Of a DNA stretch of 64,000 nucleotides, positions 5,991-34,862 are shown in pieces (position 1 is the first letter of the stretch; each line of letters starts with the position of its first letter). Origin of the DNA: Macrostomum lignano (lineage: Eukaryota); the NCBI GenBank assembly GCA_002269645.1, contig NIVC01001265.1, positions 248,001-312,000 on the forward strand, written 5' to 3'. Position numbers and translations under genes: made by a program. Under the pieces are notes generated by a model that was given only the letters and a program-made list of their open reading frames with translations, was not told the origin of the DNA and made no database searches.

Positions 5991-10163
<4,173 letters not shown>

Positions 10164-13523: not shown

Positions 13524-16500
13524 TTAGTCCAGCTGAAGTTGTATTCCTCGCGTCAGTCCGACAGCGCCAGGCGCCAGCAGTTGGCGCCAGACCGAGGCGC
13601 AGTCGGGCCGATCGGCTCTCCAGGTGAGCAGCAGGGAGCCGGCGGGCTGCCACGGCAGTCGCGGCAGACTTTCCGGACTGCCGAGTTCCACGGCGATCTC
13701 CAGTCGCGCTTCGGTCAGCGACGCGGCCGGCAGGGGAAACCTGACGGCTTTGTGCGACCACCGGAAATTCCCGATTGACGCCGCCGCCGGACACTGCGGC
13801 GGAACGGGCGGCCACTTGCGCAGCTTGACGCAGCGGCCTCCAGGCGTCAGGCGCAGGCGGATGGCGACCCTGCAGCTGTAGAGGCGTCCGGACTCCTGCG
13901 GCAGCGGTAGGGCGGTGCACTCCAGAAGGCGCACGAAGAGGTCCAGCCGTTCACCCTCTGCCGCGGCCGTCGGCGTCGTCTCCAGCAGGATTCGGCCGCG
14001 GCTTTCGGGCGGACAGCTGACTGGCCGCTCCAGGCGCTTCCACATGCATAGGCGGTGAGCTCCTTGAAGGTCGGGCTGGACCAGGCCGGTGCCCAGGACG
14101 ATGACGCTGCTGCCCTTCCTGCTGCTGCTGTTGCTGTCAGCTGCGGAATCGAGCTTGCGACCTCTGTCTTTGGCTAAAACATCAGTTTGGTATGTTATTT
14201 TGGCATGTCCGTAATGGCTAATGAATCTGAGCTAATTGTTGCTAATGAATCTGAGCTAATTGTTGCTAATGAATCTGGGCTAATTGTTGCTAATGAATCT
14301 GAGCTAATTGTTGCTAATGAATCTGAGCTAATTGTTGCTAATGAATCTGGGCTAATTGTTGCTAATGAATCTGAGCTAATTTTTGCTAATGAATCTGGGC
14401 TAACTGTTGCTAATGAATCTGAGCTAACTGTTGCTAATGAATCTGAGCTAATTGTTGCTAATGAATCTGAGCTAATTGTTGCTAATGAATCTGAGCTAAT
14501 TGTTGCTAATGAATCTGAACTAATTGTTGCTAATGAATCTGGGCTAATTGTTGCTAATGAATCTGGGCTAATTGTTGCTAATGAATCTGGGCTAATTGTT
14601 GCTAATGAATCTGGGCTAATTGTTGCTAATGAATCTGGGCTAATTGTTGCTAATGAATCTGGGCTAATTGTTGCTAATGAATCTGAGCTAATTGTTGCTA
14701 ATGAATCGGAGCTAATTGTTGCTAATGAATCTGAGCTAACTGTTGCTAATGAATCTGGGCTAATTGTTGCTAATGAATCTGGGCTAATTGTTGCTAATGA
14801 ATCGGAGCTAATTGTTGCTAATGAATCTGAGCTAACTGTTGCTAATGAATCTGAGCTAACTCTTGCTATTACAAGCGCGTACTATAAGCTAATTTTAGTT
14901 AATGTGCTGAGCTAATTTTAGTTAATGTGCTGAGCTAATTTCTGTTAATTTCAGTAAAATGCTTTGATCGCACCGTAACCTCGCTCGCAGCTTCCAGTCC
15001 CAGAATTCCGATTGTCAACCGACTCATCGGTTGCCATAGCAACAATTCGCAGCAGCTCCAGCTGGATTTTGGGTTTCACAACTCCAACGAGGCGGTCGGA
15101 AATTCGGAACACCGTGGGGGCGCCCGAAGCGGTGCACCAGTTGTGAGCTGGCGATGCCGCCGTGCTGAGCTCCTCGCTCTTGAGGCGGCACGGACCGTCA
15201 AAGGTGACCACCAGGCGGCACTGGTAGCTGCTGTGCTGCTGCTCGCCAGCCTCCTCGGGCTCCCCGACCTGCTCCTGGCTGAGGCACGGCCGTGCCTTCA
15301 CGATGCCGATGCTGTACATCCGCTCCGCCGGGTTGCTCTGTACAAACAGCAGCAGCAGCCAGTCTGCTGGCCCGCACGGACCTGCAAAGGTGTGGGATGG
15401 CAGCCAGTATGGTCTGGTTGGGGAATGGGTGTGGGATGGCAGCCAGTCTGGTCTGACTGGGGAATGGGTGTGGGATGGCAGCCAGTATGGTCTGGTTGGG
15501 GAATGGGTGTGGGATGGCAGCCAGTCTAATCTGATTGGGGAATGGGTGTGGGATGGCAGCCAGTCTGGTCTGACTGGGGAATGGGTGTGGGATGGCAGCC
15601 AGTCTGGTCTGGTTGGGGAATGGGTGTGGGATGGCAGCCAGTCTGGTCTGACTGGGGAATGGGTGTGGGATGGCAGCCAGTATGGTCTGGTTGGGGAATG
15701 GGTGTGGGATGGCAGCCAGTCTGGTCTGACTGGGGAATGGGTGTGGGATGGCAGCCAGTATGGTCTGGTTGGGGAATGGGTGTGGGATGGCAGCCAGTCT
15801 GGTCTGATTGGGGAATGGGTGTGGGATGGCAGCCAGCCTGGTCTGATGGGGGATTTAACTTATGAAATTCAGAACATCTTGCTTTGTAACTTCAGTTACG
15901 AATTATCTAATGCTTAAAAAACTGTACTCACTACTATCTAAGCAGCCATTTTCAGTAGTAGCACCGCATTCACTAAGCCAGATAATAAGTTGACTGATAG
16001 CCCCCTGATTAAGGACCCAACAATACGGGGTCTTAACAAGCTCTGAGTGGCTCATGCGTGTCAAGGCAGGGGCTTAGCTTACAGGTACGCGGACGGGCCC
16101 TCATTCCAACGCGGTTAATTGGCTGTTTCGAAAGAGTTCCGCCTACTTAATTTGGCAAAATAGCTCGGCCTAGGGGAAGCCGCTAGTTCGAACTTTGAAA
16201 GCAGGAAAGAAAAAATTTGGCAGAAAAATACACAAAGGCGCTATAGGGGTCGGAAAAAGTGAAGCGTTCATGCTCAGTTGACTAAAACAGGCCGTTAGAA
16301 GGCACCGATGAAGTGCTAGCAGACTCTAAGGAACTTTAAGGTGTATTAGAAGGAACAGGGTGTGCTAGAAGGGCAAGGTGTGCTAGAAGGGACAGGTGTG
16401 CTAGAAGGGACAGGTGTGCTAGAAGGGCAAGGTGTGCTAGAAGGGACAGGTGTGCTAGAAGGGACAGGTGTGCTAGAAGGGACAGGTGTGCTAGAAGGGA

Positions 16501-18557
16501 CAGGGTGTGCTAGAAGGAACAGGTGTGCTAGAAGGAACAGGTGTGCTAGAATGAACAGGTGTGCTAGAAGGGCAAGGTGTGCTAGAAGGAACAGGTGTGC
16601 TAAAATGAACAGGTGTGCTAGAAGGGCAAGGTGTGCTAGAAGGAACAGGTGTGCTAGAAGGGCAAGATGTGCTAGAAGGGACAGGTGTGCTAGAAGGGAC
16701 AGGTGTGCTAGAAGGAACAGGTGTGCTAGAAGGGACAGGTGTGCTAGAAGGGACAGGTGTGCTAGAAGGGACAGGTGTGCTAGAAGGGACAGGTGTGCTA
16801 GAAGGGACAGGTGTGCTAGAAGGGACAGGGTGTGCTAGAAGGAACAGGTGTGCTAGAAGGAACAGGTGTGCTAGAATGAACAGGTGTGCTAGAAGGGCAA
16901 GGTGTGCTAGAAGGAACAGGTGTGCTAGAAGGGCAAGATGTGCTAGAAGGGACAGGTGTGCTAGAAGGGCAAGATGTGCTAGAAGGGACAGGTGTGCTAG
17001 AAGGGCAAGATGTGCTAGAAGGGACAGGTGTGCTAGAAGGGACAGGTGTGCTAGAAGGAACAGGTGTGCTAGAAGGGACAGGTGTGCTAGAAGGGCAAGG
17101 TGTGCTAGAGGGGACAGGTGTGCTAGAAGGGACAGGTGTGCTAGAAGGAACAGGTGTGCTAGAAGGGACAGGTGTGCTAGAAGGAACAGGTGTGCTAGAA
17201 GGGACAGGTGTGCTAGAAGGGACAAGGTGTGCTAGAAGGGACAGGGTGTGCTAGAAGGAACAGGTGTGCTAGAAGGGACAGGTGTGCTAGAAGGGACAGG
17301 TGTGCTAGAAGGGCAAGGTGTGCTAGAAGGGACAGGTGTGCTAGAAGGGCAAGATGTGCTAGAAGGAACAGGGTGTGCTAGAAGGGCAAGGTGTGCTAGA
17401 ACGGACAGGTGTGCTAGAAGGGACAGGTGTGCTAGAAGGAACAGGTGCGCTAGAAGGGACATGGTGCGCTAGAACGGACAGGGTGCGCTAGAAGGGACAG
17501 GGTGTGCTAGAAGGGACAGGTGTGCTAGAGGGGACAGGTGTGCTAGAAGGGACAGGTGTGCTAGAAGGGACAGGTGTGCTAGAAGGGCAAGGTGTGCTAG
17601 AGGGGACAGGTGTGCTAGAAGGGACAGGTGTGCTAGAAGGAACAGGTGTGCTAGAAGGGACAGGTGTGCTAGAAGGAACAGGTGTGCTAGAAGGGACAGG
17701 TGTGCTAGAAGGGACAGGTGTGCTAGAAGGGACAAGGTGTGCTAGAAGGGACAGGGTGTGCTAGAAGGAACAGGTGTGCTAGAAGGGACAGGTGTGCTAG
17801 AAGGGACAGGTGTGCTAGAAGGGCAAGGTGTGCTAGAAGGGACAGGTGTGCTAGAAGGGACAGGTGTGCTAGAAGGGACAGGTGTGCTAGAAGGGACAGG
17901 TGTGCTAGAAGGGACAGGTGTGCTAGAAGGGACAGGTGTGCTAGAAGGGACAGGTGTGCTAGAAGGGACAGGTGTGCTAGAAGGGACAGGTGTGCTAGAA
18001 GGAACAGGTGTGCTAGAAGGGACAGGTGTGCTAGAAGGGACAGGCTGTGCTAGAAGGGACAGGTGTGCTAGAAGGGACAGGTGTGCTAGAAGGGACAGGT
18101 GTGCTAGAAGGGACAGGTGTGCTAGAAGGGACAGGTGTGCTAGAAGGGACAGGTGTGCTAGAAGGGACAGGTGTGCTAGAAGGGACAGGTGTGCTAGAAG
18201 GCACAGGTGCTGCTCACCATCCGCAGGCTGCACAAGCTGCAGCCTCTCCATGACATTCAAATGAAACTGGTTGCCAAGCTGTAGCTGGTCGAAGTCGAAG
18301 TCAAATTGAAACGGACCGACAGCAGCGAGCGACTCCGGCTGCACCTCGGCGATGCTGGTCTCAACGCAGGGCGTCGGCTGCGGCTTCACCAGCTGGCCGG
18401 CGACTTCGGTCGTCACTGCTGACGCCTCCCCGATGTGGACTGTCGGCTTTCGTTGTCGGCGAAGCCTGAGAAGCCACAGAGCGGCGGCCGCGGCGGCCAG
18501 CAGGACCGCAGCAGCGAAGGCGCAGGCGGCGGCGAGGCCGGCGTCTTCTGCTCGCAT
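13524..18557 (-). CDS. Divergent synaptotagmin-like protein (N-terminal TM anchor + two C2-like domains), 3 exons (18557-18218, 15381-~14980, 14173-13524), ~463 aa
   Basis: The N-terminal [25 protein letters not shown] is followed by basic RLRRQRK. Both introns are GT-AG phase 1 and give one open frame of 1392 nt. C2-like strands: [24 protein letters not shown]; GRILLETT...[11 protein letters not shown]; RLEIAVE...GSLLLTW...WRQLLAPG. The exon 2 donor could be 7 nt further on in the same phase. Confidence 0.65.
14215..14865. repeat. 24-bp intronic minisatellite (GCTAATGAATCTGAGCTAATTGTT)
   Basis: Directly visible; fills intron 2 of the synaptotagmin-like gene. Confidence 0.95.
15390..15850. 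repeat. 39-bp intronic minisatellite (GGGTGTGGGATGGCAGCCAGTCTGGTCTGACTGGGGAAT)
   Basis: Directly visible; ends ~8 nt from the acceptor at 15382. Confidence 0.95.
16355..18210. repeat. 18-bp intronic minisatellite (GTGCTAGAAGGGACAGGT), ~1.85 kb
   Basis: Directly visible; starts ~10 nt after the donor at 18217. Confidence 0.97.
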
Positions 18558-18851
18558 TTTTCTTCTTCAATTGGCCACGATTTGCTATCTCTGCTTTGCC
18601 AAGTGGCCTCTTTAAGCTTCATATCTTAGCTAGTTGCGCCTTCTTTACTTTGAAGAAGCAGAAATCACAGATACGGATGGCCGTGCTCAAATCCTGGATT
18701 GGCGCGGCGGGTCAGCTGGGGCCGACTGGGGCTGTCTGAGTCACTATTGTGTGCCCCATTGTGCGTTTGAGTAGCGCTAGCGGGGGACAGTGGGACAGGC
18801 TTGGGTGAGGTCTAAAAATAGAACAGTTGAGAGAGATATTCGTGTGTACTA

Positions 18852-19436
<585 letters not shown>

Positions 19437-19617
19437 AGCTAACCAGCAGACATCATGCCGCTCTAGACCAATCACAGCTGAGCTGACAGGGGAAGCACAA
19501 GCTACATTCCCGCCTCATTTAAATGCCTCAGTTCGAGCTCAGGTCCTCACTGACGATAAGGAGTCTAGGTTTCTATATTCTACAGTTACCTAATACTAGA
19601 TAAACCGCTGGCGGCTA

Positions 19618-19968
19618 ATGATGAGGCATCAGCCAGCCGCCCTGTTGCTATCCGCGCTGCTCTGTGTTGCTGGAGCCGCTATGGCCGGCCCGCTACGATG
19701 GCCCCAGGAATTCGGTGAGTACTTTTTAGAGCACCTTTAGATATTCAAAAGATCTGCAATAAGATCTCTAACCCAACTGGCAGGCGTTGAAGATGACGAA
19801 CTAGTGCAGCCTCCGCCTCCGCTGCCTGACTGGCCAGAAGAGCCGCTGCTTGGTACCGACTTTGGCTTCGAGGAGGTGCAGCCGCAGCCGCCGCAACAGC
19901 CGCTGATTCTGCCGCGGTTCAGCAAGAGGTGCCGACTGAATGACTACAGAGCCTGCCCGATTGGATGA
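19618..19968 (+). CDS. Neuropeptide precursor, 2 exons (19618-19714, 19784-19968), 93 aa; predicted mature peptide CRLNDYRACPI-amide
   Basis: Translation: MMRHQPAALLLSALLCVAGAAMAGPLRWPQEFG|VEDDELVQPPPPLPDWPEEPLLGTDFGFEEVQPQPPQQPLILPRFSKR-CRLNDYRACPIG*. This is a signal peptide, acidic spacer, KR site, two Cys and a terminal Gly. The 69-nt intron has GTGAGT, a CTAAC branch motif and GGCAG, in phase 1. Confidence 0.85.
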
Positions 19969-20604
19969 ACATGGCGCTGCTTTCTCTTCTTGAAGAAAAA
20001 GTACTTTTAACAATGCGATGTTGAAGCTCCAGCAAGCTTTATATACAGTTGGCGATTAAAACAAGAAAATCACTGGCGGATTGCAGTTTTGCCTGTTTTT
20101 TGCCGACTTGGGCGGTCATATTTTCTGTCTTGTTTTCTCAATGGATGGCTATAATTGCTATATTATTAGAACGGAGATCAATTACAACGCAATAACATTG
20201 TATCCATGGCAGACTCAATGGATACACCAAAGAAAGCAAAGGAATTGTTGACGAATTTTGATGTCAGCTGGAATTAGCTCTAGACGATTGTACGAGTAAT
20301 TCTGCTTATTTTCAGAGATAAGCATCTGAAGGATAAAATGGGTGAACAAAGCAAAATTTTCCAGATAGCAATTTCAGTTTTTTTGGCACTGAATTCCAAA
20401 TAAAGCAAGAAAGTGTTTCGTTAGACCGGTGCACTCAACATTTTATGAAGAAAACGCTTGAAAAAATATTTGAAAATATGAAAAATATGAGCGACAAACC
20501 AATGTTGTGTTTTTTAAACAGATTTAGCAAAGATTTGCTTTTTGTACTTCATGTAAAACTAGCCTGATTTATCTGTGAGTACATCTCACACTAAACACAC
20601 AGCT

Positions 20605-21590: not shown

Positions 21591-23275
21591 TACAGTAGGC
21601 ACTGAATCGAACTTCATTCAGTGCATTGCGCTCATCCTAACTAATACGAAATTCTGTCTAAACAAGATAAGAGCTCTTTTACCTAAATGCTGATTGACCG
21701 GGTCCTGGAAGGATAGATGGGGAAGGTACTGAGCGGTCATATCGATCCCCAGCCTGCGCTCTGGTCAGTCAGGCATTCACGCAGCTGTCATATGGAGAGC
21801 AGCTTCATTAGCCCCAGCTTGGGAGAGCTGCATAACTGGGAGAAATTTCCATATTTTATTGAAATTTTATTTATAACAGTTGCCTTAATTATGCAGCTTG
21901 CACTTTGCTTGTGAATGATGCAATCCATTCAAACACTTGACTTCAGTGCCTGTTGGGAGTTTGAACGTAACTCAAAGCCTAATAATTTGAGTTCATTTCT
22001 CCTTTCAGCGAAATTTCCCACTGGAGCTTCTCTCGCCGGACGGATTGCGTGAGTCAAAACATTTTTGTTATAGTTTGGGATTAGTGATTAAAATATCTCG
22101 CATATTTCTATTTGACTTGCATACATTCAATCCAATTCAATTCAATTGATTTTTAGACTAATAAAGTATATTTAGATTTCAGAGCAACCACTCCGTTGTG
22201 CAGTTCGTGCTTGAAATCCCTGTCGGGAGATCCATGTGGGGAAATCCCTGTGGGGAAATCCCTTTAGGAAAATCCCCATCAAGGAAATCTCCTGCGGGGA
22301 TTTTTTATCGAAGCCCTTAATAAAAGAACCTTTTTAAGAACCGAAACAGTCAGTTTTGGGTTGTAGTTGTACAAGTGCCGGCAAAAAGGAATATGAAAAA
22401 GAATGCTGTATTTTTATTATCCGACTGAATGTATTTTATTTCTGCACTGTTCTACTAATAGTAGCTTGATGGCTTGAAGCTAGTTTGTTATCTACAATAT
22501 TTTATGTACGTATTATCAGTATGCGTACACTGAGCTGCCACAGTTAATCAACTCCTGCCCCTACTGTTCGACTTGCCTACGCTATTAATGACTCTGCCCG
22601 CGGGCTGCACTACTTTGCTTGGTTCAGTTCAAGCAAGTTCAATAAATTAATGAATGACTAATTATCTTTCACCATATAGCGTAGCCATTTACACAATTTC
22701 ACCCGTGTTACCCGTCATAAAGTTATAGAGTAGTAAATACGCACGCAATTGGTCAAGTTCAAGATAACGTCTAAGTCTTACAGTCTTATTAATCTTACAG
22801 TCTAAGTCTAAGATAACGCACTGCGAGCCCTCTGCCCGCTCAAGTAGACAAAAATAGGTCCATCTCTCGTCGTGTCCTTTAAACCCTCTCCTTTCCTTCC
22901 CTTCTCTTCCCCAACCGACCGCCCCTCGTCGAAGCCTATGTACATTCACCAGTGTACATTGTCTTGATAAGGATGGATGGCCGCGCAAGCCTGTTTATGC
23001 AAAGAACACAACTAGACTGCACTGACTCAGTGGGCAGGAGAAGGGCAATCCCTATTTTGCATTGTCTGCCGAGTGTGAAAAAAAGCATTGCACAATATTG
23101 TCGCAACCAACGTTCTTTAGCTTGACGCAAGCAAATTAATTTATTCCTCTGACACCAACCCCAGAATACACCCTATTTTTTATAAAAAGAACTGCCAAGG
23201 TCAAACGGAGAATATAAAAGGGCATAGAGACTAAATAGAAATTCACTTGTTAATCTGCCGCTATTACGATTAAAA

Positions 23276-26200
23276 ATGACGCAAGAAACCTTGCAGCAGC
23301 AGCAACAGCAACAAGTTCTCACTGTGCGCGGAGTCAATCTGACTGTGGAGGGTGGACGGCAGATTCTGCACAATGTACACCTGACGGCCAAGTCTGGATC
23401 TATGCTGGCCGTTATGGGACCCAGTGGTTAGTGAGACTGAATTGTTATTATCTTTAAAATCCAATGCTAATTTACAGAATTAACATAAGCAAGCTTAGAA
23501 ACTGATCACACCTGCGAATATCAGTCCAGAGATAATCACACCTGAGAATATCAGTGCAGAGATTATCACACCTGTGAATATCAGTCCAGAGATTATCACA
23601 CCTGTGAATATAACTCCAGAGAAGATCACGCGTGAGAATACCAGTCTAGAGAAGATCAGATGTGAGAATACCAGTCTAGAGATCACACCTGAGTAATATC
23701 AATCCAGATATTATCACATGTGAGAATACCAGTCTAGAGAAGATCACATGTGAGAATACCAGTCTAGAGAAGATCACATGTGAGAATACCAGTCTAGAGA
23801 AGATCACATGTGAGAATACCAGTCTAGAGAAGATCACATGTGAGAATACCAGTCTAGAGAAGATCACACGTGAGAATACCAGTCTAGTGAAGATCACACG
23901 TGAAAATACCAGTCTAGAAAAGATCACATGTGAGAATACCAGTCTAGAGAAGATCACATGTGAGAATACCAGTCTAGAGAAGATCACATGTGAGAATACC
24001 AGTCTAGAGAAGATCACACGTGAGAATACCAGTCTAGAGAAGATCACATGTGAGAATACCAGTCTAGAGAAGATCACATGTGAGAATACCAGTCTAGAGA
24101 AGATCACATGTGAGAATACCAGTCTAGAGAAGATCACACGTGAGAATACCAGTCTAGAGAAGATCACATGTGAGAATACCAGTCTAGAGAAGATCACACG
24201 TGAGAATACCAGTCTAGAAAAGATCACATGTGAGAATACCAGTCTAGAGAAGATCACATGTGAGAATGCCAGTCTAGAGAAGATCACATGTGAGAATACC
24301 ATGCAGTCTAGAGAAGATCACACGTGAGAATACCAGTCTAGAAAAGATCACATGTGAGAATACCAGTCTAGAAAAGATCACATGTGAGAATACCAGTCTA
24401 GAGAAGATCACATGTGAGAATACCAGTCTAGAGAAGATCACACGTGAGAATACCAGTCTAGAGATCACACGTGAGAATACCAGTCTAGAGAAGATCACAT
24501 GTGAGAATACCAGTCTAGAGAAGATCACATGTGAGAATACCAGTCTAGAGAAGATCACATGTGAGAATGCCAGTCTAGAGAAGATCACATGTGAGAATAC
24601 CAGTCTAGAGAAGATCACATGTGAGAATGCCAGTCTAGAGAAGATCACATGTGAGAATACCAGTCTAGAGAAGATCACACGTGAGAATACCAGTCTAGAG
24701 ATCACACGTGAGAATACCAGTCTAGAGATCACACGTGAGAATATCGCGTATCAACCGACGGACCACGGGGGGACCACGTCCAAGACCAGGATCAATAAAA
24801 TATACGCTAAGTAACTAAGTAGCATGGCAAAAACTTAAACAGTAACTAAATTAATTTCTCAATAAAAAACGAATCCCCATGCAGGCTCCGGCAAGACCAG
24901 CCTCATGAACCTCATCTGCGGCAGGAGGCCGCCCTCCTCAACCATGGACGGTGAAATTCTGCTCAATAATCGAAAAGTCACTTCCCGGATGAGGAAAAGC
25001 TTTGGCTACGTTACTCAGGAGGACGTCTTTTTTAGTCAGCTCACGCTCAAGCAGACTCTCTGGGTTTGTTCAACTGTCGATATTATGGGATCTCTAATTC
25101 GGGATCAATACCTGGATGATGGGATCTCTAATTAGGTATTAATACCTGGATGATGGGATCTCTAATTAGGTATTAATACCTTGATGATGGGGATCTCTAA
25201 TTAGGTATTAGGTCTAATTACTCGTAGTGATTTATACCTGGCTAATGGGATCTCTAATTGGGGATTAATGATTAAATGATGAGATCTCTGTTTAGAGATA
25301 AACACCTGAAAAATTGGAACAGTCTTATTATTGATTTGTGATTGCCTAAATCACTCTTCCTTACCCTTGTCTGATTTCAGTTTTTCTCCCAGGTGAAGCT
25401 GCCCAGCTCAATGACCGCCAAAGACAAGGAGAAACGAGTTAACGAAGTCGTTGAACTACTGCAGTTGACCAAGTGCCTCGATACAAGTGAGACTGTCTGC
25501 GATGTCTAACTAGCAGAGTTTATTGGGAGAACGATTAATTTCTGGGTGACCAAGTCAAGTTTCGGGGAAAGTGAAGTCTCGCTAAGTGTCACGTTAGCCG
25601 ATAACTTAAAGAGTCAAATTGAGCTAAAAATAGAAATGCAAAGGAATCTCCAAGGGCACTGACCTTGGTAGTCTTAGTGACGCCCTTTCCCATATCCCCC
25701 GCAGAGATCGGCGGCATGTCAGATCAGGGCCTCTCAGGCGGTGAGAAAAAGCGAGCAAACATCGCCTGCGAGTTGCTGCGCAATCCCAAGGTGCTACTGC
25801 TGGACGAGCCGACCTCCGGCTTGGACTCCAGCCTAGCGCTCAAACTGATGGAGATCCTTGGCCGCTGGGTGGTTGAGCAGAGCAGCATCGTGGTCACCAG
25901 TATTCACCAGCCGTCGTCGCAGACGTTTCACGAGTTTCACGAACTGCTCCTGCTGGCAGACGGGCAGATCGCCTACTCGGGTAGGCGGGAGCTGATGGTG
26001 GAGTACTTTGAGGGCATCGGGGTGCCGTTCCACAAGCACTGGAATGCGGCCGACTTCATGCGTGAGTTTGTGCGCGATCTCTAATTAGCATTGCATAATT
26101 AATTAGCTGTCACCAGGTTGTCTGCTTTTTGGGAGCAGAGGGCGAGAAACTGTCACGTGTACTTAGATTTACCTAACCGGATGTCAGGGGTTGTCAGATA

Positions 26201-29200
26201 TTCTATGTCATTGTTTGTCGAGCATCTTGAACCCGCAGTGGAGGTGGTGAAGGAGAGCTCCCAGCACAAGGCGCACATCCTTGAGAACGGCAGGCAGTTC
26301 GCGGAGCGGGCCAAGCAGGAACAGCAGCAGCTGGCATCGGCCAGCGCCTCCCAGGTGCACCTGAACCTGTCCTACCAGGCCGATGCCGGTTCCAGGCAGA
26401 ACGGATTGGCAGGTCTGGACGAGGGCTCGGTGCGCATCCGGTTCACCAGTCCGGATTTCTCTCCGCAGGCGGCGGCGGCGGCAAAACTGCAGGACGACTC
26501 TGAAGGCGTTCACCTGGTGCCTGAGGTCAGCTGGTGGACTCAATTCCTAGCGCTGAGCTATCGCGGCTTCCTGGTTTCCCGGGAAGCCATCCTGTCTGTG
26601 CAGGTGCTGGTACAGACCGCCTTTGTGGCCTTCATTGTTAGCGTGCTGTGGTTCCAGGTGGCCAAGACTGAGAATAACATTGCCGATTTTATTTCTGCGG
26701 TGAGCCGTTAACAGGATTTGACTTCTAGTGGGGGATTTGAGATCTGACTTCTAGTGGGGGATCTGGGATCTGACTTCTAGTGGGAGATCTGGGATCTGGG
26801 ATCTGACTTCTAGTGGAGGATTTGGGATCTGACTTCTAGTGAGGATTTGGGATTTGGGATCTGACTTCTAGTGGGGGATCTGGGATCCGACTTCTAGTGG
26901 GGGATTTGGGATCTGGGATCTGACTTCTAGTGGGGGATCTGGGATTTGACTTCTTTTGTAGGATTTGGGTTCAGGGATTTGGGATCTAACTTCTGTTGGG
27001 GAATTTGGGATCTGGGATCTGAATTTTAATGGGGGATCAGGGATTTCAGATTTGGGATCTGACTTTTAGTGGGAGATCTGGGATCTGGGATCCGAAATCG
27101 GACTTTTCATAGGATTTGGGATCTGGGATTTGAATCTGGAGTCTGGGATTGGAGCTTCAACGTTGGAATTTAAGCCGGGATCGCTATTTAATAATAATCA
27201 TGTACATCTGCTGAAATTTTACTTAAACTCCAGATTTTCTTCCTAACAAGCTACGTAACTTTTGCACCGTTCTTCGAAGCCATAATGACGTGTAAGTCAG
27301 TTCTATAAAAATAGCATTCTTCTCTATTCCCAAGATATCCCGCGCGACCTCGTGTGACCTTTTCCTCCATTATCGCTCCCCGTTCGCATTCCTGGCAGTC
27401 TACGCCGACTTGGCCATAGTGAGGCACGAGCGCAAGTCCGGCATGTACCGCATTGGCGCTTACTACCTGGCCAAGATGGTGGTGGAGATCCCGCTGCTGC
27501 TGGTGGTGCCCATCTTCATCATCGCGCCAGCTTATTGGTGCGTTGGCTTTGCCGACTTTGGCGCTTTCGCGGCCTTCCTAGTGGTCATCACCTTGAATAG
27601 CCTGGCCTCGCAGGTGAGCTCCGGCTGGCGGGGTAGCTCAGCAGCCAGCGTGTCAAAGTCTCTGGGTTCGAATAGGTCGAGGCTCTTGTCGTGCGATTCG
27701 TGTCCGAGAGGGCCAACCCCTCAAGGCACAGAGAGTTGTACATGTCTGGCGATTAGAAAGTCAGGGCATCGACTGATTTGCCTTCTCGCTGGGTCCGCGC
27801 TGACAGTGGCCTTGATCTGCGGCAGCGCCCACACCCCTCCCCTTGCGAACTAACTGAATATACCGAGGCACGGGTACACAAACACAGACACCGAGACAAT
27901 GAGACACAAAGACACAAACACAAAGATACCGAGACACTGAAACACAAAGACACATAGACACAAAAACACAGCCACCGCGAAACAAAGACACCGAAAGACA
28001 CCGAGACACAAAGACACCGAGACACAAAGACACCGAGACACAAAGACACCGAGACACAAAGACACCGAGACACAAAGACACCGAGACACAAAGACACCGA
28101 GACACAAAGACACCGAGACACAAAGACACCGAGACACAAAGACACCGAGACACAAAGACACCGAGACACAAAGACACCGAGACACAAAGACACCGAGACA
28201 CAAAGACACCGAGACACAAAGACACCGAGACACAAAGACACCGAGACACAAAGACACCGAGACACAAAGACACCGAGACACAAAGACACCGAGACACAAA
28301 GACACCGAGACACAAAGACACCGAGACACAAAGACACCGAGACACAAAGACACCGAGACACAAAGACACCGAGACACAAAGACACCGAGACCCAAAGACA
28401 CCGAGACACAAAGACACCGAGACCCAAAGACACCGAGACACAAAGACACCGAGACACAAAGACACCGAGACACAAAGACACCGAGACACAAAGACACCGA
28501 GACACAAAGACACCGAGACACAAGGACAAAGACACTGACACTGAGACACAAAGACACCGAGACAATGAGACACAAAGGCACAGACAAAGACACAAACACA
28601 AAGACACCGAGATAATGAGACACAAAGACAAACACAAAGACACCGAGACAATGAGACACAAAGACAGACACAAAGACGGACACTTCAAAGCTGAGAAATT
28701 CACTTACAGTCTACTCCTCAGTAGTGAAAAAGGTTTTCCTGTCGCCAAATTCACTGTAGGGCATCGGAATCGTCTTCAGCCTCCTGTCCACCAATCCGAG
28801 AACGAACATGACCTTTGCCTTCATCTACATGATTTTCTGCTTTCTGACTGGTGAGTAGGTTTCTCAAAATTGTGCCAGTTAGCGCACTCCAGTTGGCAAT
28901 GACCCGCAGCCTCCCAGATTAGAAGCAAAACCCGCAACCAACATTGCATAGGCGGATTCTTCACTAAAAGCATCCCGTTCTGGTTCGACTGGGCCAAATA
29001 CCTGTCCTATATTCGCTACTGCTATCACTTCGGTCTCATAATCATACTGGAGAGGACGGACGATTTTCGGTGAGCTGTAGGAGTCAGCGGAATGAGTAGA
29101 ACTGCTTTCAGAGCTGGTTATGGGGCGATGTCGCCTGAAGGCGTTGCTCCAGGTTGCCCGCAACCCTAGCTTCTGCAAATAATTTTATACCAATCTCGCC

Positions 29201-30243: not shown

Positions 30244-33200
30244 TGTAGCATGCGCAGGCAGGCAGTTCGGCACCTAGTTTGCACTCCGTGACCCCCACCC
30301 AGCCTATCCAATTCCCTCTGCTCGAGCACATCCCAACGCGCACTCAATGAACCGAAAATCTGTGTTCTACCAGACAATAAATATACAGGCACAGCCAATT
30401 CTATTTCTTCACCTTTTTGAGTGGCTAACTAACACTCGCAACAACCAGCCAGAGTTGCTCGCTACATTGGCGTCACAAGCTAGAACCCAATGGCGCTACT
30501 ACAGCTACAGCCGCCATCCGCATTCAGCATTAGCGCGGACCCCCACACCGTCAGCAAGCGCTGGACAGAGTGGGCCACCACACTAAAGCGATTCTTGGCA
30601 GCATCAGGAATTTCGGACGACGCCCAGAAGCAGGAAATCCTCCTGTATACCGCGGGAAAAGAGGTTGCAGACATCTTTAAAGAGATCTCACAGACGCGTC
30701 CCGCCACTGACCAGCCGGAGCAGCAAACGCTTGACTCACTCATAGCTGCGCTAACTCAGCACTTTCAAGGACGCGACAATGTGGTGTTCACCCGGTACCG
30801 ATTCCGCCAGTGCACGCAGCTAGACGGCGAAGGCATCGACAGCTGGTACAACCGACTGTGCAACGCGGCTGAGGCCTGCCAGTTCGGAGAGCTGCGCCAC
30901 TCCCTCATCCGCGACCAGATCGTCGCCTGCTGCCGCAGTGAATCCCTCCGAAAGCGGCTGCTCAACGTGCCCAACATCAGCCTCCCCGAGGCCCTCCAGC
31001 TGGCGAGAACAAACGAAGCAGCCAGCCAGCAAGCGGCAATCATGGAGCGCTCGGCAGCCGGACCAGCTGAAGAAGTGCATGCGGCACGCGACAAGCGCCC
31101 CACCAGGCGCCCGCCAGCCAGCCCGGCCGACAAATGCCTGCGGTGCGGAGAGCCCGGCCAGCGCACTTGCAACCGGGCCCAAGGCAAGCGCTGCAGCAAC
31201 TGCGGCAAGCTGCACCACCTGGCGAAGGCCTGCCTAAGCGGCCGCGCACGCATCAACATGGCAGAGCCTGAGCCAGAGGAACCAGCAGTGGCGCACCTGG
31301 CGGAGGCGGTATTCTCCAGCCTCGACCCCAGCCGCACAAGCGCCACCTTCAAAGCGGTCATCAACGGCGCGAACGTACCCGTCCTGATCGACAGCTTGCG
31401 AGCTGCAACGTGCTCAGCCAGCGGACCCTTCATCTCACGGGAGCACCCGAGCGGGCGCTTCAGCCCACGCACACGAGGGTCTATCCTCTCGGAGCAGCGA
31501 GGCCCCTGACACCCGCTGGCCAGATCACTCTGCACACGAAGATCAACGGCAACTCGGAGAGAGTGCGCTTCATCGTCATCAGAGAGGACTGCATCACCAT
31601 CCTAGGCCGCGAGACAAGCACGCAGATGGGGATGCTGAGGGTCGGACCGCAGGCCGAGACAGCTCTCACCGCCGGACTGACACCAACGGTTAACGACCTG
31701 CACCTTCCGCAAGACTTGCGACTGTCATCGATCATGAAGGAGTTCAGCGACAGGTTTCAAGGAATCGGCTGCATCAAGGGCGTCTCAGTCAGAATCCAGC
31801 TGAAGGAAGAAGCGGTGCCAGTCTGCCACCCTCCGTCTCGAGTTCCAGTGCATCTTCGAACCGCCGTGGAAAAGGAGCTGAAGGGCCAGCTAGCAGCCGG
31901 CATCCTGGAGCGAGTGACGGGGCCCAGCGCTTGGAGTTCACGCATGGTGGTCGTTCCAAAGGCCTCGCCAGGCGAAATCCGCATCACGCAGGACCTGAGG
32001 GACGTCAATAAGTACGTCATTCCAGAAAAGCAGCCAATACCGACATTCGAAGAAGTCACCGACGAGATGGCCGGCTCCACCTATTTCTCCGAACTAGACG
32101 TTGCCAAGGCCTTCCACCAGATCGAGGTCAGTGAGGAGTCCCGGCAGCTGCTCACTTTCTCAACGCCTCTGGGCCTGCTCCGCCTCAAGCGCCTTTGCAT
32201 GGGATTTACCTCAGCATCTGAAATCCTACAGCGCGTCATGACATCTATTCTGAGCGGTTTGAGAGGCGTGCGGTGGGTCCATGACGATATCATTATCTTC
32301 GCCAGCACCATAAATGAGCACAACGAGAGGCTGCGCAACTGTCTTGACAGGCTGCGTCAACACAACGTGACTCTGAACCCCCGCAAATGCCGCATTGCAA
32401 CCCAGCAGGCCGACTTCCTGGCCATGCGCCTCTCGGCGGCCGGAATCCAACCGACCGAGGAAAAGCTGGAAGCTGTGGCCAACTTCAAGCGACCAGAAAA
32501 TGCAACGGACGTGCGGTCCTTTCTCGGACTCGTCACATTCGTAGCCCGCTTCATCCCAAACCTCGCCGACAAAGCGAGGCCACTTCGAGAGCTGACCAAG
32601 AAGAACGTGAAATGGTTGTGGGGTCCACAGCAAGCCTCAGCCTTTCAGACAATCAAGCAGTCGATCGCTCACAGCACCACGCTTGCCTTCTTCAACAAGA
32701 ACTGCGAGACCAGGCTGATCGTCGACGCCAGCCCGACCGGCCTCGGGGCGATCCTCGCCCAGGTGCAACCTGGCGGCCTCACCAGGCCAATCGCCTACGC
32801 CAGCCGCAGCCTCAGTGACACCGAGCAGCGCTACTCGCAGACAGAGAGAGAGGCGCTGGCCGTCAAATTCGGCTGCCTCAAGTTTCACCACTACCTTAGC
32901 GGCTGCCCAAAGTTCAAGGTCATCACCGACCACAAGCCGCTGGTCAGCCTGCTCAGCCCCGGCTCACGGCTCCCGCCGCGGATCGAGCGCATGGCACTTC
33001 GGCTGCAGGATCTCCACTTCGAAGTCATCTACCAGCCGGGGGCAGATAACCCGGCAGATGTCCTAAGCCGCCAGCCACGTCCAACACCACCGAAGAACGA
33101 GGGCGAGGATCTCGACACGGCCTACATCGCAATGACAGCACAGGCAGCAGCGCCGAACAGCATCAGCCTCGAAACGATCAAGGTGGCCGCCGCAGGCGAC

Positions 33201-34862
33201 AAGGCGATCCAAGCCGCCGTATCCGGGCTCCGGTCCCATCGGTGGCAACTCGATAGCCACGACACGCGCAGCCTGCACGGCCTGCGGCACGAGCTCTCAC
33301 AACACGACGGACTCCTGCTCAAAGGGCACCAAATCGTCGTTCCTGCTACTCTGCGCTACCGCTGCCTGCAGCTGGCGCACCAAGGCCACCTGGGTGTCCA
33401 GAAAACATTGGCACGCCTCCAGACAAAGGTCTGGTGGCCCTCAATGCGGGCCTCCGTCGAGAACTTCGTAAACTCCTGCCTCAGCTGCAAGGCCTGCACG
33501 AACACAGCCGAATTGAAGGCAGCCCCACTTTAGCCGACTGAGCTGCCGCAGGGGCCGTGGCTAGAGCTGGGCCTGGACTTCCTGGGACCGATCAGAGGCC
33601 ACATGCTGCTGGTGTGCACCGACTATTTTTCACGTTTCCCACTGGTACAGACAATGTCGGGGTCGACAGCGGCAGCTCCGGTCATCCGAACCCTCCGCCA
33701 GTGGTTCAGCATGTTCGGCCAGCCAGTCAAGATCACCACCGACAACGGCCCGCCATTCTCGTCCGCAGAATTCAACGCCTTCCTGCGCAGCCAGGGCGTC
33801 CACCACCATCGGACTACGCCGCTGCATCCCCAAGCCAACGGACTCGTAGAGCGATGCAACCGAGGCCTCAATAAGGCAATCAGAGCGGCGATTCTGGAAG
33901 GCAGCGACTGGCAGGCGGCACTGGACGACTACCTGGCCGCATACCGGCGAACACCGCACGCAGCAATTGGCATGGCCCCAGCCGACCTGCTATTCGGCCG
34001 ACAGCTCAACGACACGATCCCCAGCTTGCGCCACTCCCGGCCGGTTGACGCCAGGCGACAGACCGTCCGCGGCCACGACTCCAGGGCGAAGGAGCGGATG
34101 AAGGCCTTCGCCGACAGCAAGAGGGGCGCCACCGACCACCAGATCACCGTAGGCGACCTCGTACTCCGCCGACTCACCAACCGCAGCAAGACGGACCCCT
34201 TCTTCGAGGCCTCGCCATGGACCGTGACAGAAGTCGGCGGCAACACCCTGCAGCTCCAACGTGCCTGCCAGAGGTGCTCCAGGCACACCACCCACGTCAA
34301 GCGAGTCTCCCAGGCAGCCGACGAGTGGCCGGGTGACCCCGGAGAACGCGACAGCGGACAGGACAGCCGGCCGGATGAACCAACCGGCCCGCCCGAGCCA
34401 ACCGGCAACCAGGACGTCCCTCTCGCCAACAGGCCGCACCCCCCGACAGGCCAAGGAGATGCCGAAACGCTACGAAGAGGGCGACCGGCGAAAGGCTCTG
34501 GACATCTGACAGCTGGCGGAACAGCAGCAAGGACTGATCATTTACTCTAATGACTGATACTGATTGCTCGATCGCGCGTAACATGAACCCAACGTTGTAC
34601 CCAACCCCACCCCGGGTTCCAATCCACCAGACGAGGGATGTAGCATGCGCAGGCAGGCAGTTCGGGCACCTAGTTTGCACTCCGTGACCCCCACCCAGCC
34701 TATCCAATTCCCTCTGCTCGAGCACATCCCAACGCGCACTCAATGAACCGAAAATCTGTGTTCTACCAGACAATAAATATACAGGCACAGCCAATTCTAT
34801 TTCTTCACCTTTTTGAGTGGCTAACTAACACTCGCAACAACCAGCCAGAGTTGCTCGCTACA
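30244..34862 (+). mobile_element. Full-length Ty3/Gypsy LTR retrotransposon (Mag-like architecture)
   Basis: LTRs at 30244-30466 (223 bp) and 34639-34862 (224 bp) have TGTAGC...GCTACA ends and differ by one G. The 5-bp TSD is CATCC (30239-30243, 34863-34867). A PBS-like TGGCGTCAC lies at 30468 and the purine tract GACGAGGGA precedes the 3' LTR. Domain order is gag-PR-RT-RH-IN. Confidence 0.97.
30490..34550 (+). pseudogene. Gypsy gag-pol polyprotein, interrupted by a frameshift (~31396) and an in-frame TAG (33531-33533)
   Basis: Gag zinc knuckle CSNCGKLHHLAKAC; protease VLIDS/ASCNVL split between frames; RT WVHDDIIIF; RNase H IVDASPTGLGA...EREALAV...TDHKPL; integrase HQGHLG...CLSC, LDFLGP, TDNGPPF, PQANGLVERCN. 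Confidence 0.9.

What the first reader, a model, noticed from the sequence alone, without database searches (positions are those of the whole stretch)
19618..19968. Small two-exon gene encoding a cyclic, probably amidated neuropeptide CRLNDYRACPI-NH2 (missed by the ORF track)
Seen: the spliced 93-aa precursor has a signal peptide, an acidic Pro-rich spacer, a KR site, and a single C-terminal peptide C-X7-C-P-I-G followed by a stop. Established: KR is a prohormone-convertase site and a terminal Gly is the amide donor for PAM. Inference: the product is an 11-mer with a Cys1-Cys9 ring. The C-P-x-G tail recalls oxytocin/vasopressin (CYIQNC-PLG), but the ring is larger, the peptide sits at the C-terminus, and there is no neurophysin. 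A vasopressin/oxytocin-type flatworm peptide ('platytocin') has been reported, but I cannot verify from memory whether this is its orthologue. It could instead be a new family.
Basis: partly seen in the sequence, partly recalled or inferred. Interest (0 to 1): 0.85.

Follow-up and report, generated by a model that had tools for sequence, protein, structure and literature searches.

The report
Flatworm orphan cyclic-peptide prohormone gene
A small gene of the flatworm Macrostomum lignano, already annotated but never characterised, encodes a secreted 93-residue precursor that would most likely be cut and amidated into an 11-residue disulfide-ring peptide; it is a plausible new signalling peptide, but it is not the flatworm vasopressin/oxytocin ('platytocin') gene and has no detectable relatives.

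Summary
CDS 19618-19714 + 19784-19968 (+), split by a 69-nt GTGAGT...CAG intron, gives the 93-aa protein as described. It has a signal peptide (A-M-A|G), an acidic Pro-rich spacer, a single dibasic site (K80-R81), and then CRLNDYRACPIG-stop.

The window is Macrostomum lignano. The exact protein is already in GenBank as PAA70106.1, 'hypothetical protein BOX15_Mlig011818g1'. That annotation is built only from transcripts, so a spliced mRNA exists. Two further copies (g2, g3) are about 97% identical across the 861-nt aligned block, flanks and intron included, so they say nothing about selection.

The vasopressin/oxytocin link is not supported:
- The peptide is C-terminal rather than next to the signal peptide.
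- The ring is C-x7-C rather than C-x4-C.
- There is no neurophysin.
- The published M. lignano VP-type precursors are four other proteins.

No relative was found outside M. lignano. Residue-level similarity to 27 reference cyclic neuropeptides is at chance level. A profile comparison with allatostatin-C precursors is negative.

Best reading: an orphan prohormone processed to a cyclic amidated 11-mer (1319.62 Da). Processing, neural expression and conservation remain untested. Interest is moderate to low.

The parts
19468..19472 (+). CCAAT motif, possible promoter element (low confidence)
   Evidence: Read directly from the sequence. It lies 50 nt upstream of the TATA-like motif. It is identical in all three gene copies, but so is nearly everything else. 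Function not tested.
19518..19524 (+). TATA-like TTTAAAT, 100 nt upstream of the ATG (low confidence)
   Evidence: Read directly from the sequence. It would place a transcription start near 19550. No transcription-start data were available here.
19618..19714 (+). Exon 1 coding part: Met1 to the first base of Gly33. Codons 1-23 (19618-19686) encode the predicted signal peptide MMRHQPAALLLSALLCVAGAAMA.
   Evidence: Translation. Hydropathy peaks at 2.0-3.0 over residues 6-15, and A-x-A sits at positions -3/-1. In-frame stops lie upstream. Identical to the annotated CDS of PAA70106.1. SignalP was not available.
19715..19783 (+). 69-nt phase-1 intron, GTGAGT...CAG
   Evidence: Canonical splice sites. 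38% G+C against 62-64% in the exons. The intron contains in-frame stops. The same junction is used in the transcript-derived GenBank models of all three copies.
19784..19923 (+). Exon 2, acidic Pro-rich spacer (rest of Gly33 through Ser79)
   Evidence: Translation and composition: 14 Pro, 11 acidic and 2 basic residues in the 56-residue spacer (residues 24-79), with no internal dibasic site. No Pfam domain.
19924..19929 (+). AAG AGG = Lys80-Arg81, the only dibasic (prohormone-convertase type) site
   Evidence: Cleavage is inferred, not shown.
19930..19962 (+). Predicted mature peptide CRLNDYRACPI (Cys82-Ile92), with a Cys1-Cys9 ring
   Evidence: Invariant in the three copies. Calculated monoisotopic mass of the amidated disulfide form is 1319.6227 Da. 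The disulfide and the processing are inferred.
19963..19968 (+). GGA TGA = C-terminal Gly93 (putative amide donor) and stop codon
   Evidence: Amidation is inferred from the established rule that a C-terminal Gly is the substrate of peptidylglycine alpha-amidating enzymes.
20055..20060 (+). ATTAAA, candidate polyadenylation signal 87 nt after the stop
   Evidence: Pattern search. Conserved in the three copies. The poly(A) site itself was not seen here.

Best explanation
This is a real, transcribed two-exon gene of Macrostomum lignano (Mlig011818.g1, GenBank PAA70106.1). It encodes a classical prepro-peptide.

Proposed mechanism:
1. The N-terminal 23 residues direct the protein into the ER and are removed after A-M-A.
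2. Cys82 and Cys90 are oxidised to a disulfide.
3. In the regulated secretory pathway a prohormone convertase (PC2-type) cuts after Lys80-Arg81. This releases the C-terminal 12-mer CRLNDYRACPIG from an acidic, Pro-rich spacer that has no other processing site.
4. Because Gly is already the last residue, no carboxypeptidase step is needed.
5. The amidating enzymes convert it to the cyclic 11-mer c[CRLNDYRAC]PI-NH2 (1319.62 Da).
6. The peptide then acts as a neuropeptide or peptide hormone, most probably on a G-protein-coupled receptor.

Shown here: gene structure, transcript-based annotation, and the sequence features. Inferred: signal-peptide cleavage site, KR cleavage, disulfide, amidation, neural or endocrine expression, and a receptor.

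By sequence it is an orphan. It cannot be assigned to any known peptide family, and in particular it is not the VP/OT-type (platytocin) gene.
For: Gene and protein:
- Exact gene structure and protein.
- The identical protein is in GenBank, with two further copies.
- That annotation derives purely from RNA-seq, StringTie/TACO and a de novo transcriptome, followed by TransDecoder (PMC5730564). A spliced transcript with this junction therefore exists.
- Exon/intron G+C contrast, hydrophobic h-region with AxA, a single KR, and a Gly-stop ending.
- The C-terminal motif is unique in the window and expected 0.13 times by chance.

Processing machinery:
- M. lignano has a PC2 homologue expressed in the nervous system. 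Its knock-down is lethal to juveniles (PMC4490696).

Precedent for the layout:
- The layout is signal peptide, spacer, dibasic site, then one C-terminal two-Cys peptide. Accepted neuropeptide precursors of similar size share it.
- Spiralian allatostatin-C precursors of 87-141 aa end in ...KR-x(n)-C-x6-C-[YF]-G-(basic). The amidated form was confirmed by mass spectrometry in Lineus.
- The 88-aa starfish MCH-type precursor has the same layout (PMC4772807).

Copies:
- The three copies differ at 7 codons: 3 non-synonymous (P6T, S12T, L46P) and 4 synonymous. None falls in the last 37 codons.
Against: - No evidence on tissue of expression, on the processed peptide, or on a receptor.
- No homologue in any other species. 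The word-indexed search of 5.8 billion proteins, the exhaustive phmmer search of 1.84 billion representatives and the metagenome scan all returned only M. lignano or nothing.
- The cross-species conservation that normally validates a predicted neuropeptide is therefore missing. These collections probably lack other Macrostomum transcriptomes, so absence is weak evidence either way.
- The three copies are about 97% identical across the aligned block, with 2-3% variable sites in CDS and flanks alike and none in the intron. The invariance of the peptide therefore carries no statistical weight.
- SignalP and NeuroPred-type predictors were not available.
- The gene and peptide are not mentioned in any searchable paper, nor in the supplements checked.
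Confidence: 0.55

Rival explanations
1. It is a strongly derived member of the somatostatin / allatostatin-C / MCH group of C-terminal cyclic peptides. These ligands act on rhodopsin-gamma-type GPCRs. On this reading it would be the flatworm representative of an old bilaterian family rather than an orphan.
For: - Same precursor architecture and size as spiralian AstC precursors and the starfish MCH-type precursor.
- Several spiralian AstC peptides are also Gly-amidated (CY-G-[KR]n). The amidated DYVRDCFFHAVSCY was seen by mass spectrometry.
- By-eye matches with Lineus AstC (C-L-V-N-L-V-A-C): Asn at ring position 4 and Ala before Cys2.
- By-eye matches with MCH: Leu3 and Y-R-x-C. A basic residue two before Cys2 is a stated conserved MCH feature.
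Against: - All 9 spiralian AstC and AstC2 precursors aligned here have C-x6-C followed by Tyr or Phe, and 3-10 residues before Cys1. This peptide has C-x7-C followed by Pro-Ile and nothing before Cys1.
- Profile-profile comparison of the precursor with those 9 AstC precursors gives probability 3%, and only the signal peptides align.
- In a Cys-fixed shuffle test the best similarity to any of 27 reference cyclic peptides (score 24, MCH) was reached by 201 of 500 shuffles.
- MCH has Met or Ile after Cys1; here it is Arg. MCH-type peptides are so far described only from deuterostomes.
Confidence: 0.12
2. It is a vasopressin/oxytocin-type (platytocin-like) paralogue that lost its neurophysin and enlarged its ring.
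For: The tail Cys-Pro-x-Gly is shared with VP/OT peptides such as Capitella CFIRNCPIG. Local alignment finds R-x-C-P-I. Divergent VP-related paralogues that even lost their cysteines exist in nemerteans (PMC8557429).
Against: - VP/OT precursors have the peptide immediately after the signal peptide, followed by G-K-R and a neurophysin domain (PMC7181382; PMC4772807). Here the peptide is the last 12 residues, preceded by KR.
- No Pfam neurophysin or hormone domain is detected, and the whole proprotein has only 2 Cys.
- The ring is C-x7-C, not C-x4-C.
- The Gly here would be consumed as amide donor, giving ...CPI-NH2 rather than ...CPxG-NH2.
- Even the divergent nemertean paralogues keep the neurophysin domain.
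- The M. lignano VP-type precursors are four other accessions.
- No clear VP/OT-type receptor was found in M. lignano.
- Similarity to VP/OT peptides is not above shuffles (p 0.04-0.2 uncorrected; family-wise 0.4).
Confidence: 0.03
3. It is a secreted product of non-neural cells, such as gland, epidermal, gut or reproductive secretions. Alternatively it is a small secreted Pro-rich protein that is not processed at KR, in which case the two cysteines form a structural or intermolecular disulfide.
For: Nothing here shows neural expression. A signal peptide plus a Pro-rich acidic low-complexity region is also typical of secretory-gland products. The apparent restriction to M. lignano fits fast-evolving secretory or reproductive proteins.
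Against: The combination of a single dibasic site placed exactly before a short two-Cys peptide that ends in Gly-stop is the specific signature of amidated bioactive peptides. It is rare by chance. The net charge is only about +2, so an antimicrobial role is unlikely (inference).
Confidence: 0.2
4. It is a young, lineage-specific transcribed ORF without a selected function. The prohormone-like features would then be fortuitous.
For: There is no detectable homologue anywhere. The three copies are too similar to show constraint. The gene sits in a region that is 39% tandem repeats, directly downstream of an (ACTA)n array.
Against: Several independent features coincide: a signal peptide with AxA, a phase-1 intron shortly after it, a clean exon/intron G+C contrast, a unique KR, paired Cys, and Gly-stop. 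The ORF is intact in all three copies, with more synonymous than non-synonymous change per site (3 non-synonymous against 4 synonymous), although the numbers are too small for a test.
Confidence: 0.1

Closest known systems
Allatostatin-C / somatostatin-type precursors (spiralian AstC and nemertean AstC2)
   Same: Small precursor (87-141 aa) with a signal peptide, a spacer, a dibasic site and a single disulfide-ring peptide at the extreme C-terminus. It is often Gly-amidated. This is the closest match in how the precursor is built and presumably processed.
   Different: The AstC ring is invariably C-x6-C in the 9 sequences compared, followed by Tyr or Phe and preceded by an N-terminal extension. 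Here the ring is C-x7-C, followed by Pro-Ile, with no extension. No profile similarity, and peptide similarity is at chance level.
Melanin-concentrating hormone-type precursors (vertebrates; starfish ArMCHP)
   Same: ArMCHP is 88 aa with a 24-aa signal peptide and one C-terminal two-Cys peptide after a dibasic site. A basic residue two before Cys2 is conserved. The peptide here has Y-R-A-C, against human MCH Y-R-P-C (human sequence from memory).
   Different: MCH rings are larger: x8 in human (from memory), and two residues more in the invertebrate forms. Met or Ile follows Cys1 (here Arg). MCH peptides are longer (19-28 aa) and not amidated (from memory). They are known only from deuterostomes. 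Similarity is not significant.
Vasopressin/oxytocin family, including flatworm platytocin
   Same: A disulfide ring followed by Pro-x-Gly, and C-terminal amidation.
   Different: Position in the precursor (C-terminal against directly after the signal peptide), ring size (x7 against x4), no neurophysin, and no GKR. Gly is the amide donor rather than the retained residue. The M. lignano VP-type genes are other loci.
   Same: Amidated or non-amidated peptides with one disulfide ring of similar size. Examples are EP KCRGRWAIHACAAGN-NH2 (x8), L11 DCRKYVFAPKCRGV (x8) and CCAP PFCNGYYGC (x5). EP and L11 also start C-R.
   Different: EP/CCHa and L11 sit directly after the signal peptide and are followed by a long C-terminal propeptide. 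CCAP occurs in several internal copies. Alignment scores do not exceed shuffles.
Ring of lophotrochozoan calcitonin-type peptides
   Same: Lineus calcitonin-type NCLVNLGGHC... has the same C-x7-C spacing and Asn at ring position 4.
   Different: Calcitonin-type peptides continue for about 20 more residues and end in Pro-amide. Here only Pro-Ile-amide follows the ring. Score equals the shuffle mean.

Membership tests
Vasopressin/oxytocin (platytocin) precursors | Nonapeptide located immediately after the signal peptide, followed by a G-K-R processing site | tested here: not met
   The peptide is the last 12 residues (82-93), 58 residues after the predicted signal-peptide cleavage. It is preceded, not followed, by KR. 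Feature definition from PMC7181382 and PMC4772807.
Vasopressin/oxytocin (platytocin) precursors | C-terminal cysteine-rich neurophysin domain | tested here: not met
   The Pfam scan at E<=10 finds no neurophysin or hormone domain. Only 3 Cys occur in the whole precursor, one of them in the signal peptide.
Vasopressin/oxytocin (platytocin) precursors | Cys1-Cys6 ring (C-x4-C) with a retained C-terminal Gly-amide | tested here: not met
   The ring is C-x7-C. The single Gly precedes the stop and would be consumed, giving Ile-amide.
Vasopressin/oxytocin (platytocin) precursors | Identity with the M. lignano genes reported as VP/vasotocin orthologues | tested here: not met
   Reported: PAA85176.1, PAA50340.1, PAA46766.1, PAA87831.1. 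This gene family: PAA70106.1, PAA59721.1, PAA74047.1.
Vasopressin/oxytocin (platytocin) precursors | Activation of a VP/OT-type GPCR | not testable with these tools
   Needs a receptor assay. The platytocin paper found no clear VP/OT-type receptor in M. lignano.
Allatostatin-C / somatostatin-type precursors | Single cyclic peptide at the C-terminus of a small precursor, preceded by a dibasic site | tested here: met
   compared with the 9 spiralian AstC/AstC2 precursors read.
Allatostatin-C / somatostatin-type precursors | C-x6-C ring followed by an aromatic residue (protostome AstC consensus in the sequences compared) | tested here: not met
   Here the ring is C-x7-C followed by Pro-Ile. All 9 aligned reference sequences have invariant Cys spacing x6, then Y or F.
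Allatostatin-C / somatostatin-type precursors | Detectable sequence or profile similarity of the precursor or peptide | tested here: not met
   hhalign probability is 3%, covering the signal peptide only. Peptide alignment z-scores are 0.1-1.2, with p 0.14-0.44.
Allatostatin-C / somatostatin-type precursors | Ligand of an AstC/somatostatin-clade (rhodopsin-gamma) GPCR | not testable with these tools
   Requires receptor deorphanisation.
Melanin-concentrating hormone-type precursors | Met or Ile after Cys1, and a basic residue two before Cys2 (PMC4772807) | tested here: inconclusive
   Arg follows Cys1 (not met). Arg88 is two before Cys90 (met). The alignment score of 24 is reached by 40% of shuffles family-wise.
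EP/CCHamide, elevenin, CCAP | Position of the cyclic peptide directly after the signal peptide (EP, L11), or several internal copies with a C-x5-C ring (CCAP) | tested here: not met
   Reference precursors read. Here there is a single C-terminal copy with a C-x7-C ring.
Generic amidated prohormone / neuropeptide precursor | Signal peptide, dibasic cleavage site flanking a short peptide, and C-terminal Gly as amide donor | tested here: met
   The signal peptide is judged by hydropathy and the -3/-1 rule only; no SignalP.
Generic amidated prohormone / neuropeptide precursor | Expression in neurons or endocrine cells, and detection of the processed peptide | not testable with these tools
   No expression or peptidomic data were reachable. 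The gene ID and peptide are absent from the searchable literature and the supplements checked.
Generic amidated prohormone / neuropeptide precursor | Conservation of the mature peptide in related species | tested here: inconclusive
   No hit outside M. lignano. No similar C-terminal peptide turned up in word searches of the spiralian, polyclad and planarian precursor lists. Transcriptomes of other Macrostomum species could not be searched.

The most novel reading that the evidence does not exclude
The gene founds a previously undescribed, lineage-restricted (macrostomid or flatworm) family of cyclic amidated neuropeptides, c[CRLNDYRAC]PI-NH2, with its own receptor and no orthologue among the known bilaterian peptide families. 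A rarer variant of this reading is that it turns out to be the long-missing flatworm ligand of a somatostatin/AstC/MCH-clade receptor.
Probability: 0.3. Interest if true: 0.5.

Novelty: new member of a known kind. Interest (0 to 1): 0.33.

Why it matters
Neuropeptide repertoires of free-living marine flatworms are poorly sampled. No paper reachable here describes an M. lignano neuropeptidome. M. lignano is a transgenic, RNAi-amenable model.

A validated cyclic amidated peptide would add a tractable ligand for receptor deorphanisation in a basal flatworm lineage. Because the peptide is so short, it is cheap to synthesise and to look for by mass spectrometry.

The practical value of this re-examination is mostly corrective. 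The peptide should not be counted as a vasopressin/oxytocin-type molecule, and its resemblance to any named family is no better than chance. If it is real, it is one more lineage-specific neuropeptide. That is useful, but not surprising to a specialist.

Tried and rejected
1. Homologue searches.
- The word-indexed search of 5.8 billion proteins gave only the M. lignano cluster.
- The exhaustive phmmer search of 1.84 billion representatives gave four hits.
- P0004 is a 4034-aa Polarella glacialis protein matching the Pro/Gln-rich spacer in 8 stretches. I judged this compositional and rejected it.
- P0005 and P0006 are UniRef M. lignano models A0A1I8FR66 and A0A1I8FLP7. They looked at first like diverged paralogues. 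tblastn maps them onto this same locus, fused to upstream repeat ORFs or to the downstream ABC transporter. I take them to be models from a less accurate assembly, most likely ML2, which has 31.9% error-free bases. The source assembly is my inference. I rejected them as independent evidence. Their DNA could not be fetched.

I did not repeat it, because a 12-mer cannot reach E<=10 in that database unless it is nearly identical, and such a hit would already have appeared.

3. The metagenome scan matched 440 pattern stretches, and none was confirmed.

4. Word searches for ACPI, CPIG, RACP, YRAC, CRLN, KRCRL and similar strings found only unrelated proteins or canonical vasotocins. The lists searched were the Thiel 2021 precursor and reference lists (2.76 M characters), the Piovani 2023 list and the Collins 2010 planarian prohormone supplements.

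5. The gene ID, accessions and peptide string are absent from the paper library and from the supplements of Wudarski 2017 and the 2026 DEG paper. McVeigh 2009 and Koziol 2016 are not held. The platytocin supplements are not held.

6. Comparison of the three copies as a test of selection is uninformative. They are about 97% identical across the aligned block, with variable sites in CDS and flanks alike and none in the intron.

7. The bacterial promoter/terminator scan is irrelevant to a eukaryotic gene and was ignored.

8. I considered a CaaX prenylation box, since the last four residues are C-P-I-G. I rejected it because the protein has a signal peptide and would be luminal, and because Pro at a1 and Gly at X are poor CaaX residues (established knowledge, from memory).

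9. A GPI anchor is rejected because there is no C-terminal hydrophobic tail.

10. An antimicrobial cyclic peptide of the bactenecin kind (also C-x7-C, from memory) is unlikely, given a net charge of only about +2 and an Asp in the ring.
Full report
**What is in the sequence.**
- There is an ATG at 19618 and a second at 19621. The second has the better -3 A context.
- 97 coding bases run up to a GTGAGT donor at 19715.
- A 69-nt intron ends in CAG at 19783.
- 185 more bases end in TGA at 19966-19968.
- Without splicing, the frame stops 8 codons into the intron.
- The spliced product is 93 aa: MMRHQPAALLLSALLCVAGAAMA | GPLRWPQEFGVEDDELVQPPPPLPDWPEEPLLGTDFGFEEVQPQPPQQPLILPRFS | KR | CRLNDYRACPI | G.
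- Residues 6-22 form a hydrophobic core (mean Kyte-Doolittle up to 3.0), followed by A-M-A|G.
- The 56-residue spacer has 14 Pro, 11 Asp/Glu and 2 Arg.
- K80-R81 is the only dibasic site.
- Exons are 64% and 62% G+C. The intron is 38% and the flanks are 38-46%.
- A loose version of the C-terminal motif ([KR][KR]-C-x4-10-C-x0-3-G-stop) occurs only here in the six-frame translation of the window. It occurs 0.13 times per window in 200 shuffles.

**Whose gene it is.**
- The exact 93-aa sequence is GenBank PAA70106.1, 'hypothetical protein BOX15_Mlig011818g1'.
- Two more copies exist: g2 (PAA59721.1) and g3 (PAA74047.1).
- These belong to the Mlig_3_7 assembly. Its deposited annotation was produced solely from RNA-seq (StringTie/TACO), a de novo transcriptome and TransDecoder (PMC5730564).
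- The annotated CDS with this very junction is therefore indirect but real evidence for a spliced transcript.
- The gene is not unannotated. It is uncharacterised.
- Neither the gene ID nor the peptide string occurs in the searchable literature or in the supplements I could check.

**The three copies.**
- The two other loci (L001, L002) have the same 351-bp gene span and the same downstream neighbour, a 647-aa ABCG-type transporter.
- The three loci are collinear over many kilobases, including the tandem arrays.
- They are about 97% identical across the 861-nt aligned block. Variable sites run at about 2-3% in the promoter region, the CDS and the 3' flank, and there are none in the intron.
- This fits the known redundancy of this assembly.
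- Seven codons vary: three non-synonymous (P6T, S12T, L46P; signal peptide and spacer) and four synonymous. None is in the last 37 codons.
- That pattern is in the direction expected under constraint, but it is far too little to test.

**Search for relatives.**
- The word-indexed search of 5.8 billion proteins returned only this cluster.
- An exhaustive phmmer pass over 1.84 billion cluster representatives returned four hits.
- One is the cluster itself.
- One is a Pro-rich dinoflagellate protein, a compositional match.
- Two are UniRef M. lignano models. tblastn shows them to be mis-fused predictions over this same locus, probably from the older, error-rich ML2 assembly (my inference).
- A scan of JGI metagenome contigs confirmed nothing.
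- Pfam finds no domain.
- Within what these tools can see, the gene is therefore restricted to M. lignano.
- This is weak evidence. A precursor whose only conserved part may be 11 residues is nearly invisible to such searches, and transcriptomes of other Macrostomum species do not appear to be in the collections.

**Vasopressin/oxytocin (platytocin).**
- VP/OT precursors are defined by a nonapeptide directly after the signal peptide, a GKR site and a neurophysin domain. This organisation is conserved across Bilateria (PMC7181382; PMC4772807).
- Even the aberrant nemertean paralogues that lost their cysteines keep the neurophysin (PMC8557429).
- Here the peptide is at the opposite end of the precursor.
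- The ring has seven rather than four internal residues.
- There is no neurophysin.
- The lone Gly would be consumed as amide donor, so the tail would be -Cys-Pro-Ile-NH2, not -Cys-Pro-x-Gly-NH2.
- The platytocin paper names the M. lignano VP/vasotocin-type precursors as PAA85176.1, PAA50340.1, PAA46766.1 and PAA87831.1. It also reports no clear VP/OT-type receptor in M. lignano.
- None of those accessions is this gene.
- The shared C-P-I-G is four residues of coincidence. Against Capitella CFIRNCPIG, 8% of Cys-fixed shuffles of the peptide score as well.

**Other named families.** I took reference precursors from the supplement of Thiel et al. 2021.
- EP/CCHamide (KCRGRWAIHACAAGN-G-KR) and elevenin (DCRKYVFAPKCRGV...) lie directly behind the signal peptide.
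- CCAP (PFCNGYYGC...) occurs as several internal copies with a five-residue ring.
- Calcitonin-type peptides share the C-x7-C spacing but continue for about 20 residues to a Pro-amide.
- The only families built like this precursor are allatostatin-C/somatostatin-type and MCH-type: signal peptide, spacer, dibasic site, and one two-Cys peptide as the very last element.
- The AstC-type precursors are 87-141 aa and often end C-[YF]-G-basic. The amidated form was confirmed by mass spectrometry.
- The starfish MCH-type precursor is 88 aa.
- However, all nine spiralian AstC/AstC2 sequences have a six-residue ring followed by Tyr or Phe, and an N-terminal extension.
- hhalign of the M. lignano alignment against them gives 3% probability, covering the signal peptides only.
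- In a test in which the non-Cys residues of the 11-mer were shuffled 1000 times, no comparison with any of 27 reference cyclic peptides stood out.
- The best raw score (24, human MCH, whose sequence I supplied from memory) was reached by 201 of 500 shuffles when the whole panel is considered.
- The peptide therefore works like an AstC/somatostatin/MCH-type precursor in its architecture. It cannot be filed as a member of any of them.

**Most likely mechanism.** These steps are inferred.
1. Co-translational entry into the ER, and signal-peptide removal after Ala23.
2. Oxidation of Cys82-Cys90.
3. Sorting to dense-core vesicles.
4. Cleavage after Lys80-Arg81 by a PC2-type convertase. M. lignano has a PC2 homologue expressed in the nervous system and essential for juvenile development (PMC4490696).
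5. No carboxypeptidase step is needed, because Gly93 is already terminal.
6. Conversion of Gly93 to a C-terminal amide.

The product would be c[CRLNDYRAC]PI-NH2, monoisotopic 1319.6227 Da, presumably acting on a GPCR.

The acidic Pro-rich spacer has no further processing sites and is probably only a linker. The phase-1 intron ten codons after the signal-peptide cleavage site is typical of secreted-protein genes (from memory).

Putative CCAAT (19468), TATA-like (19518) and ATTAAA (20055) elements are visible but untested.

**Rivals.** Confidences are given in the Rival explanations section.
- A derived somatostatin/AstC/MCH-type ligand.
- A VP/OT paralogue.
- A non-neural secretory product or an unprocessed small secreted protein.
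- A young ORF without function.

**Verdict.**
- The processing prediction is reasonable but unverified.
- The vasopressin/oxytocin reading is not supported.
- The gene is an already annotated hypothetical protein that is a good candidate for an orphan, possibly lineage-specific, cyclic amidated neuropeptide. In kind, this is a new member of the well-known class of small prohormones.
- It is worth a peptidomics and in situ check in a model where both are easy. It is not a high-surprise finding.

Noticed in passing
window 1-64000 (largest arrays: 5980-9412, 16339-18214, 56258-57650, 23504-24743, 37016-38237): 39% of the window (24.9 kb in 55 merged arrays) is tandem repeats with periods of 4-119 bp. 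One example is a 22-bp unit repeated about 156 times at 5980-9406. Most long 'ORFs' in the six-frame list lie in these arrays and are spurious. The arrays are shared, with length differences, by the homeologous loci.
   Followed up: partly
window 18848-19436: An (ACTA)n microsatellite of about 146 units ends about 180 nt upstream of the peptide gene's ATG, just before the putative CCAAT/TATA region. All three copies carry it, with different lengths. Whether it affects the promoter is unknown.
   Followed up: partly
window ~22000-28500 (+); coding matches at 23315-23428 and 24881-25063: The downstream neighbour is an ABCG-type half transporter: 647 aa in the homeologous loci, with Pfam ABC_tran and ABC2_membrane. 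One of its introns holds a 30-bp tandem array (23504-24743). The UniRef M. lignano model A0A1I8FLP7 wrongly fuses exon 2 of the peptide gene to this transporter.
   Followed up: partly
window 31410-34550 (+): Ty3/gypsy-type LTR-retrotransposon pol. One ORF has reverse transcriptase, RNase H and integrase zinc-binding domains (31410-33533). A following ORF has the integrase core (33603-34550). LTRs and gag were not looked for.
   Followed up: partly
window 61553-62080 (-): An ORF with a uDENN domain (E 2.7e-8). It is probably an exon of a DENN-domain (Rab GEF) gene on the minus strand.
   Followed up: no
window 18249-18690: UniRef entry A0A1I8FR66, named 'YbaB/EbfC family DNA-binding protein' for M. 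lignano, is a gene model that joins repeat-derived ORFs upstream with exon 2 of the peptide gene. The name looks like an annotation artefact.
   Followed up: partly
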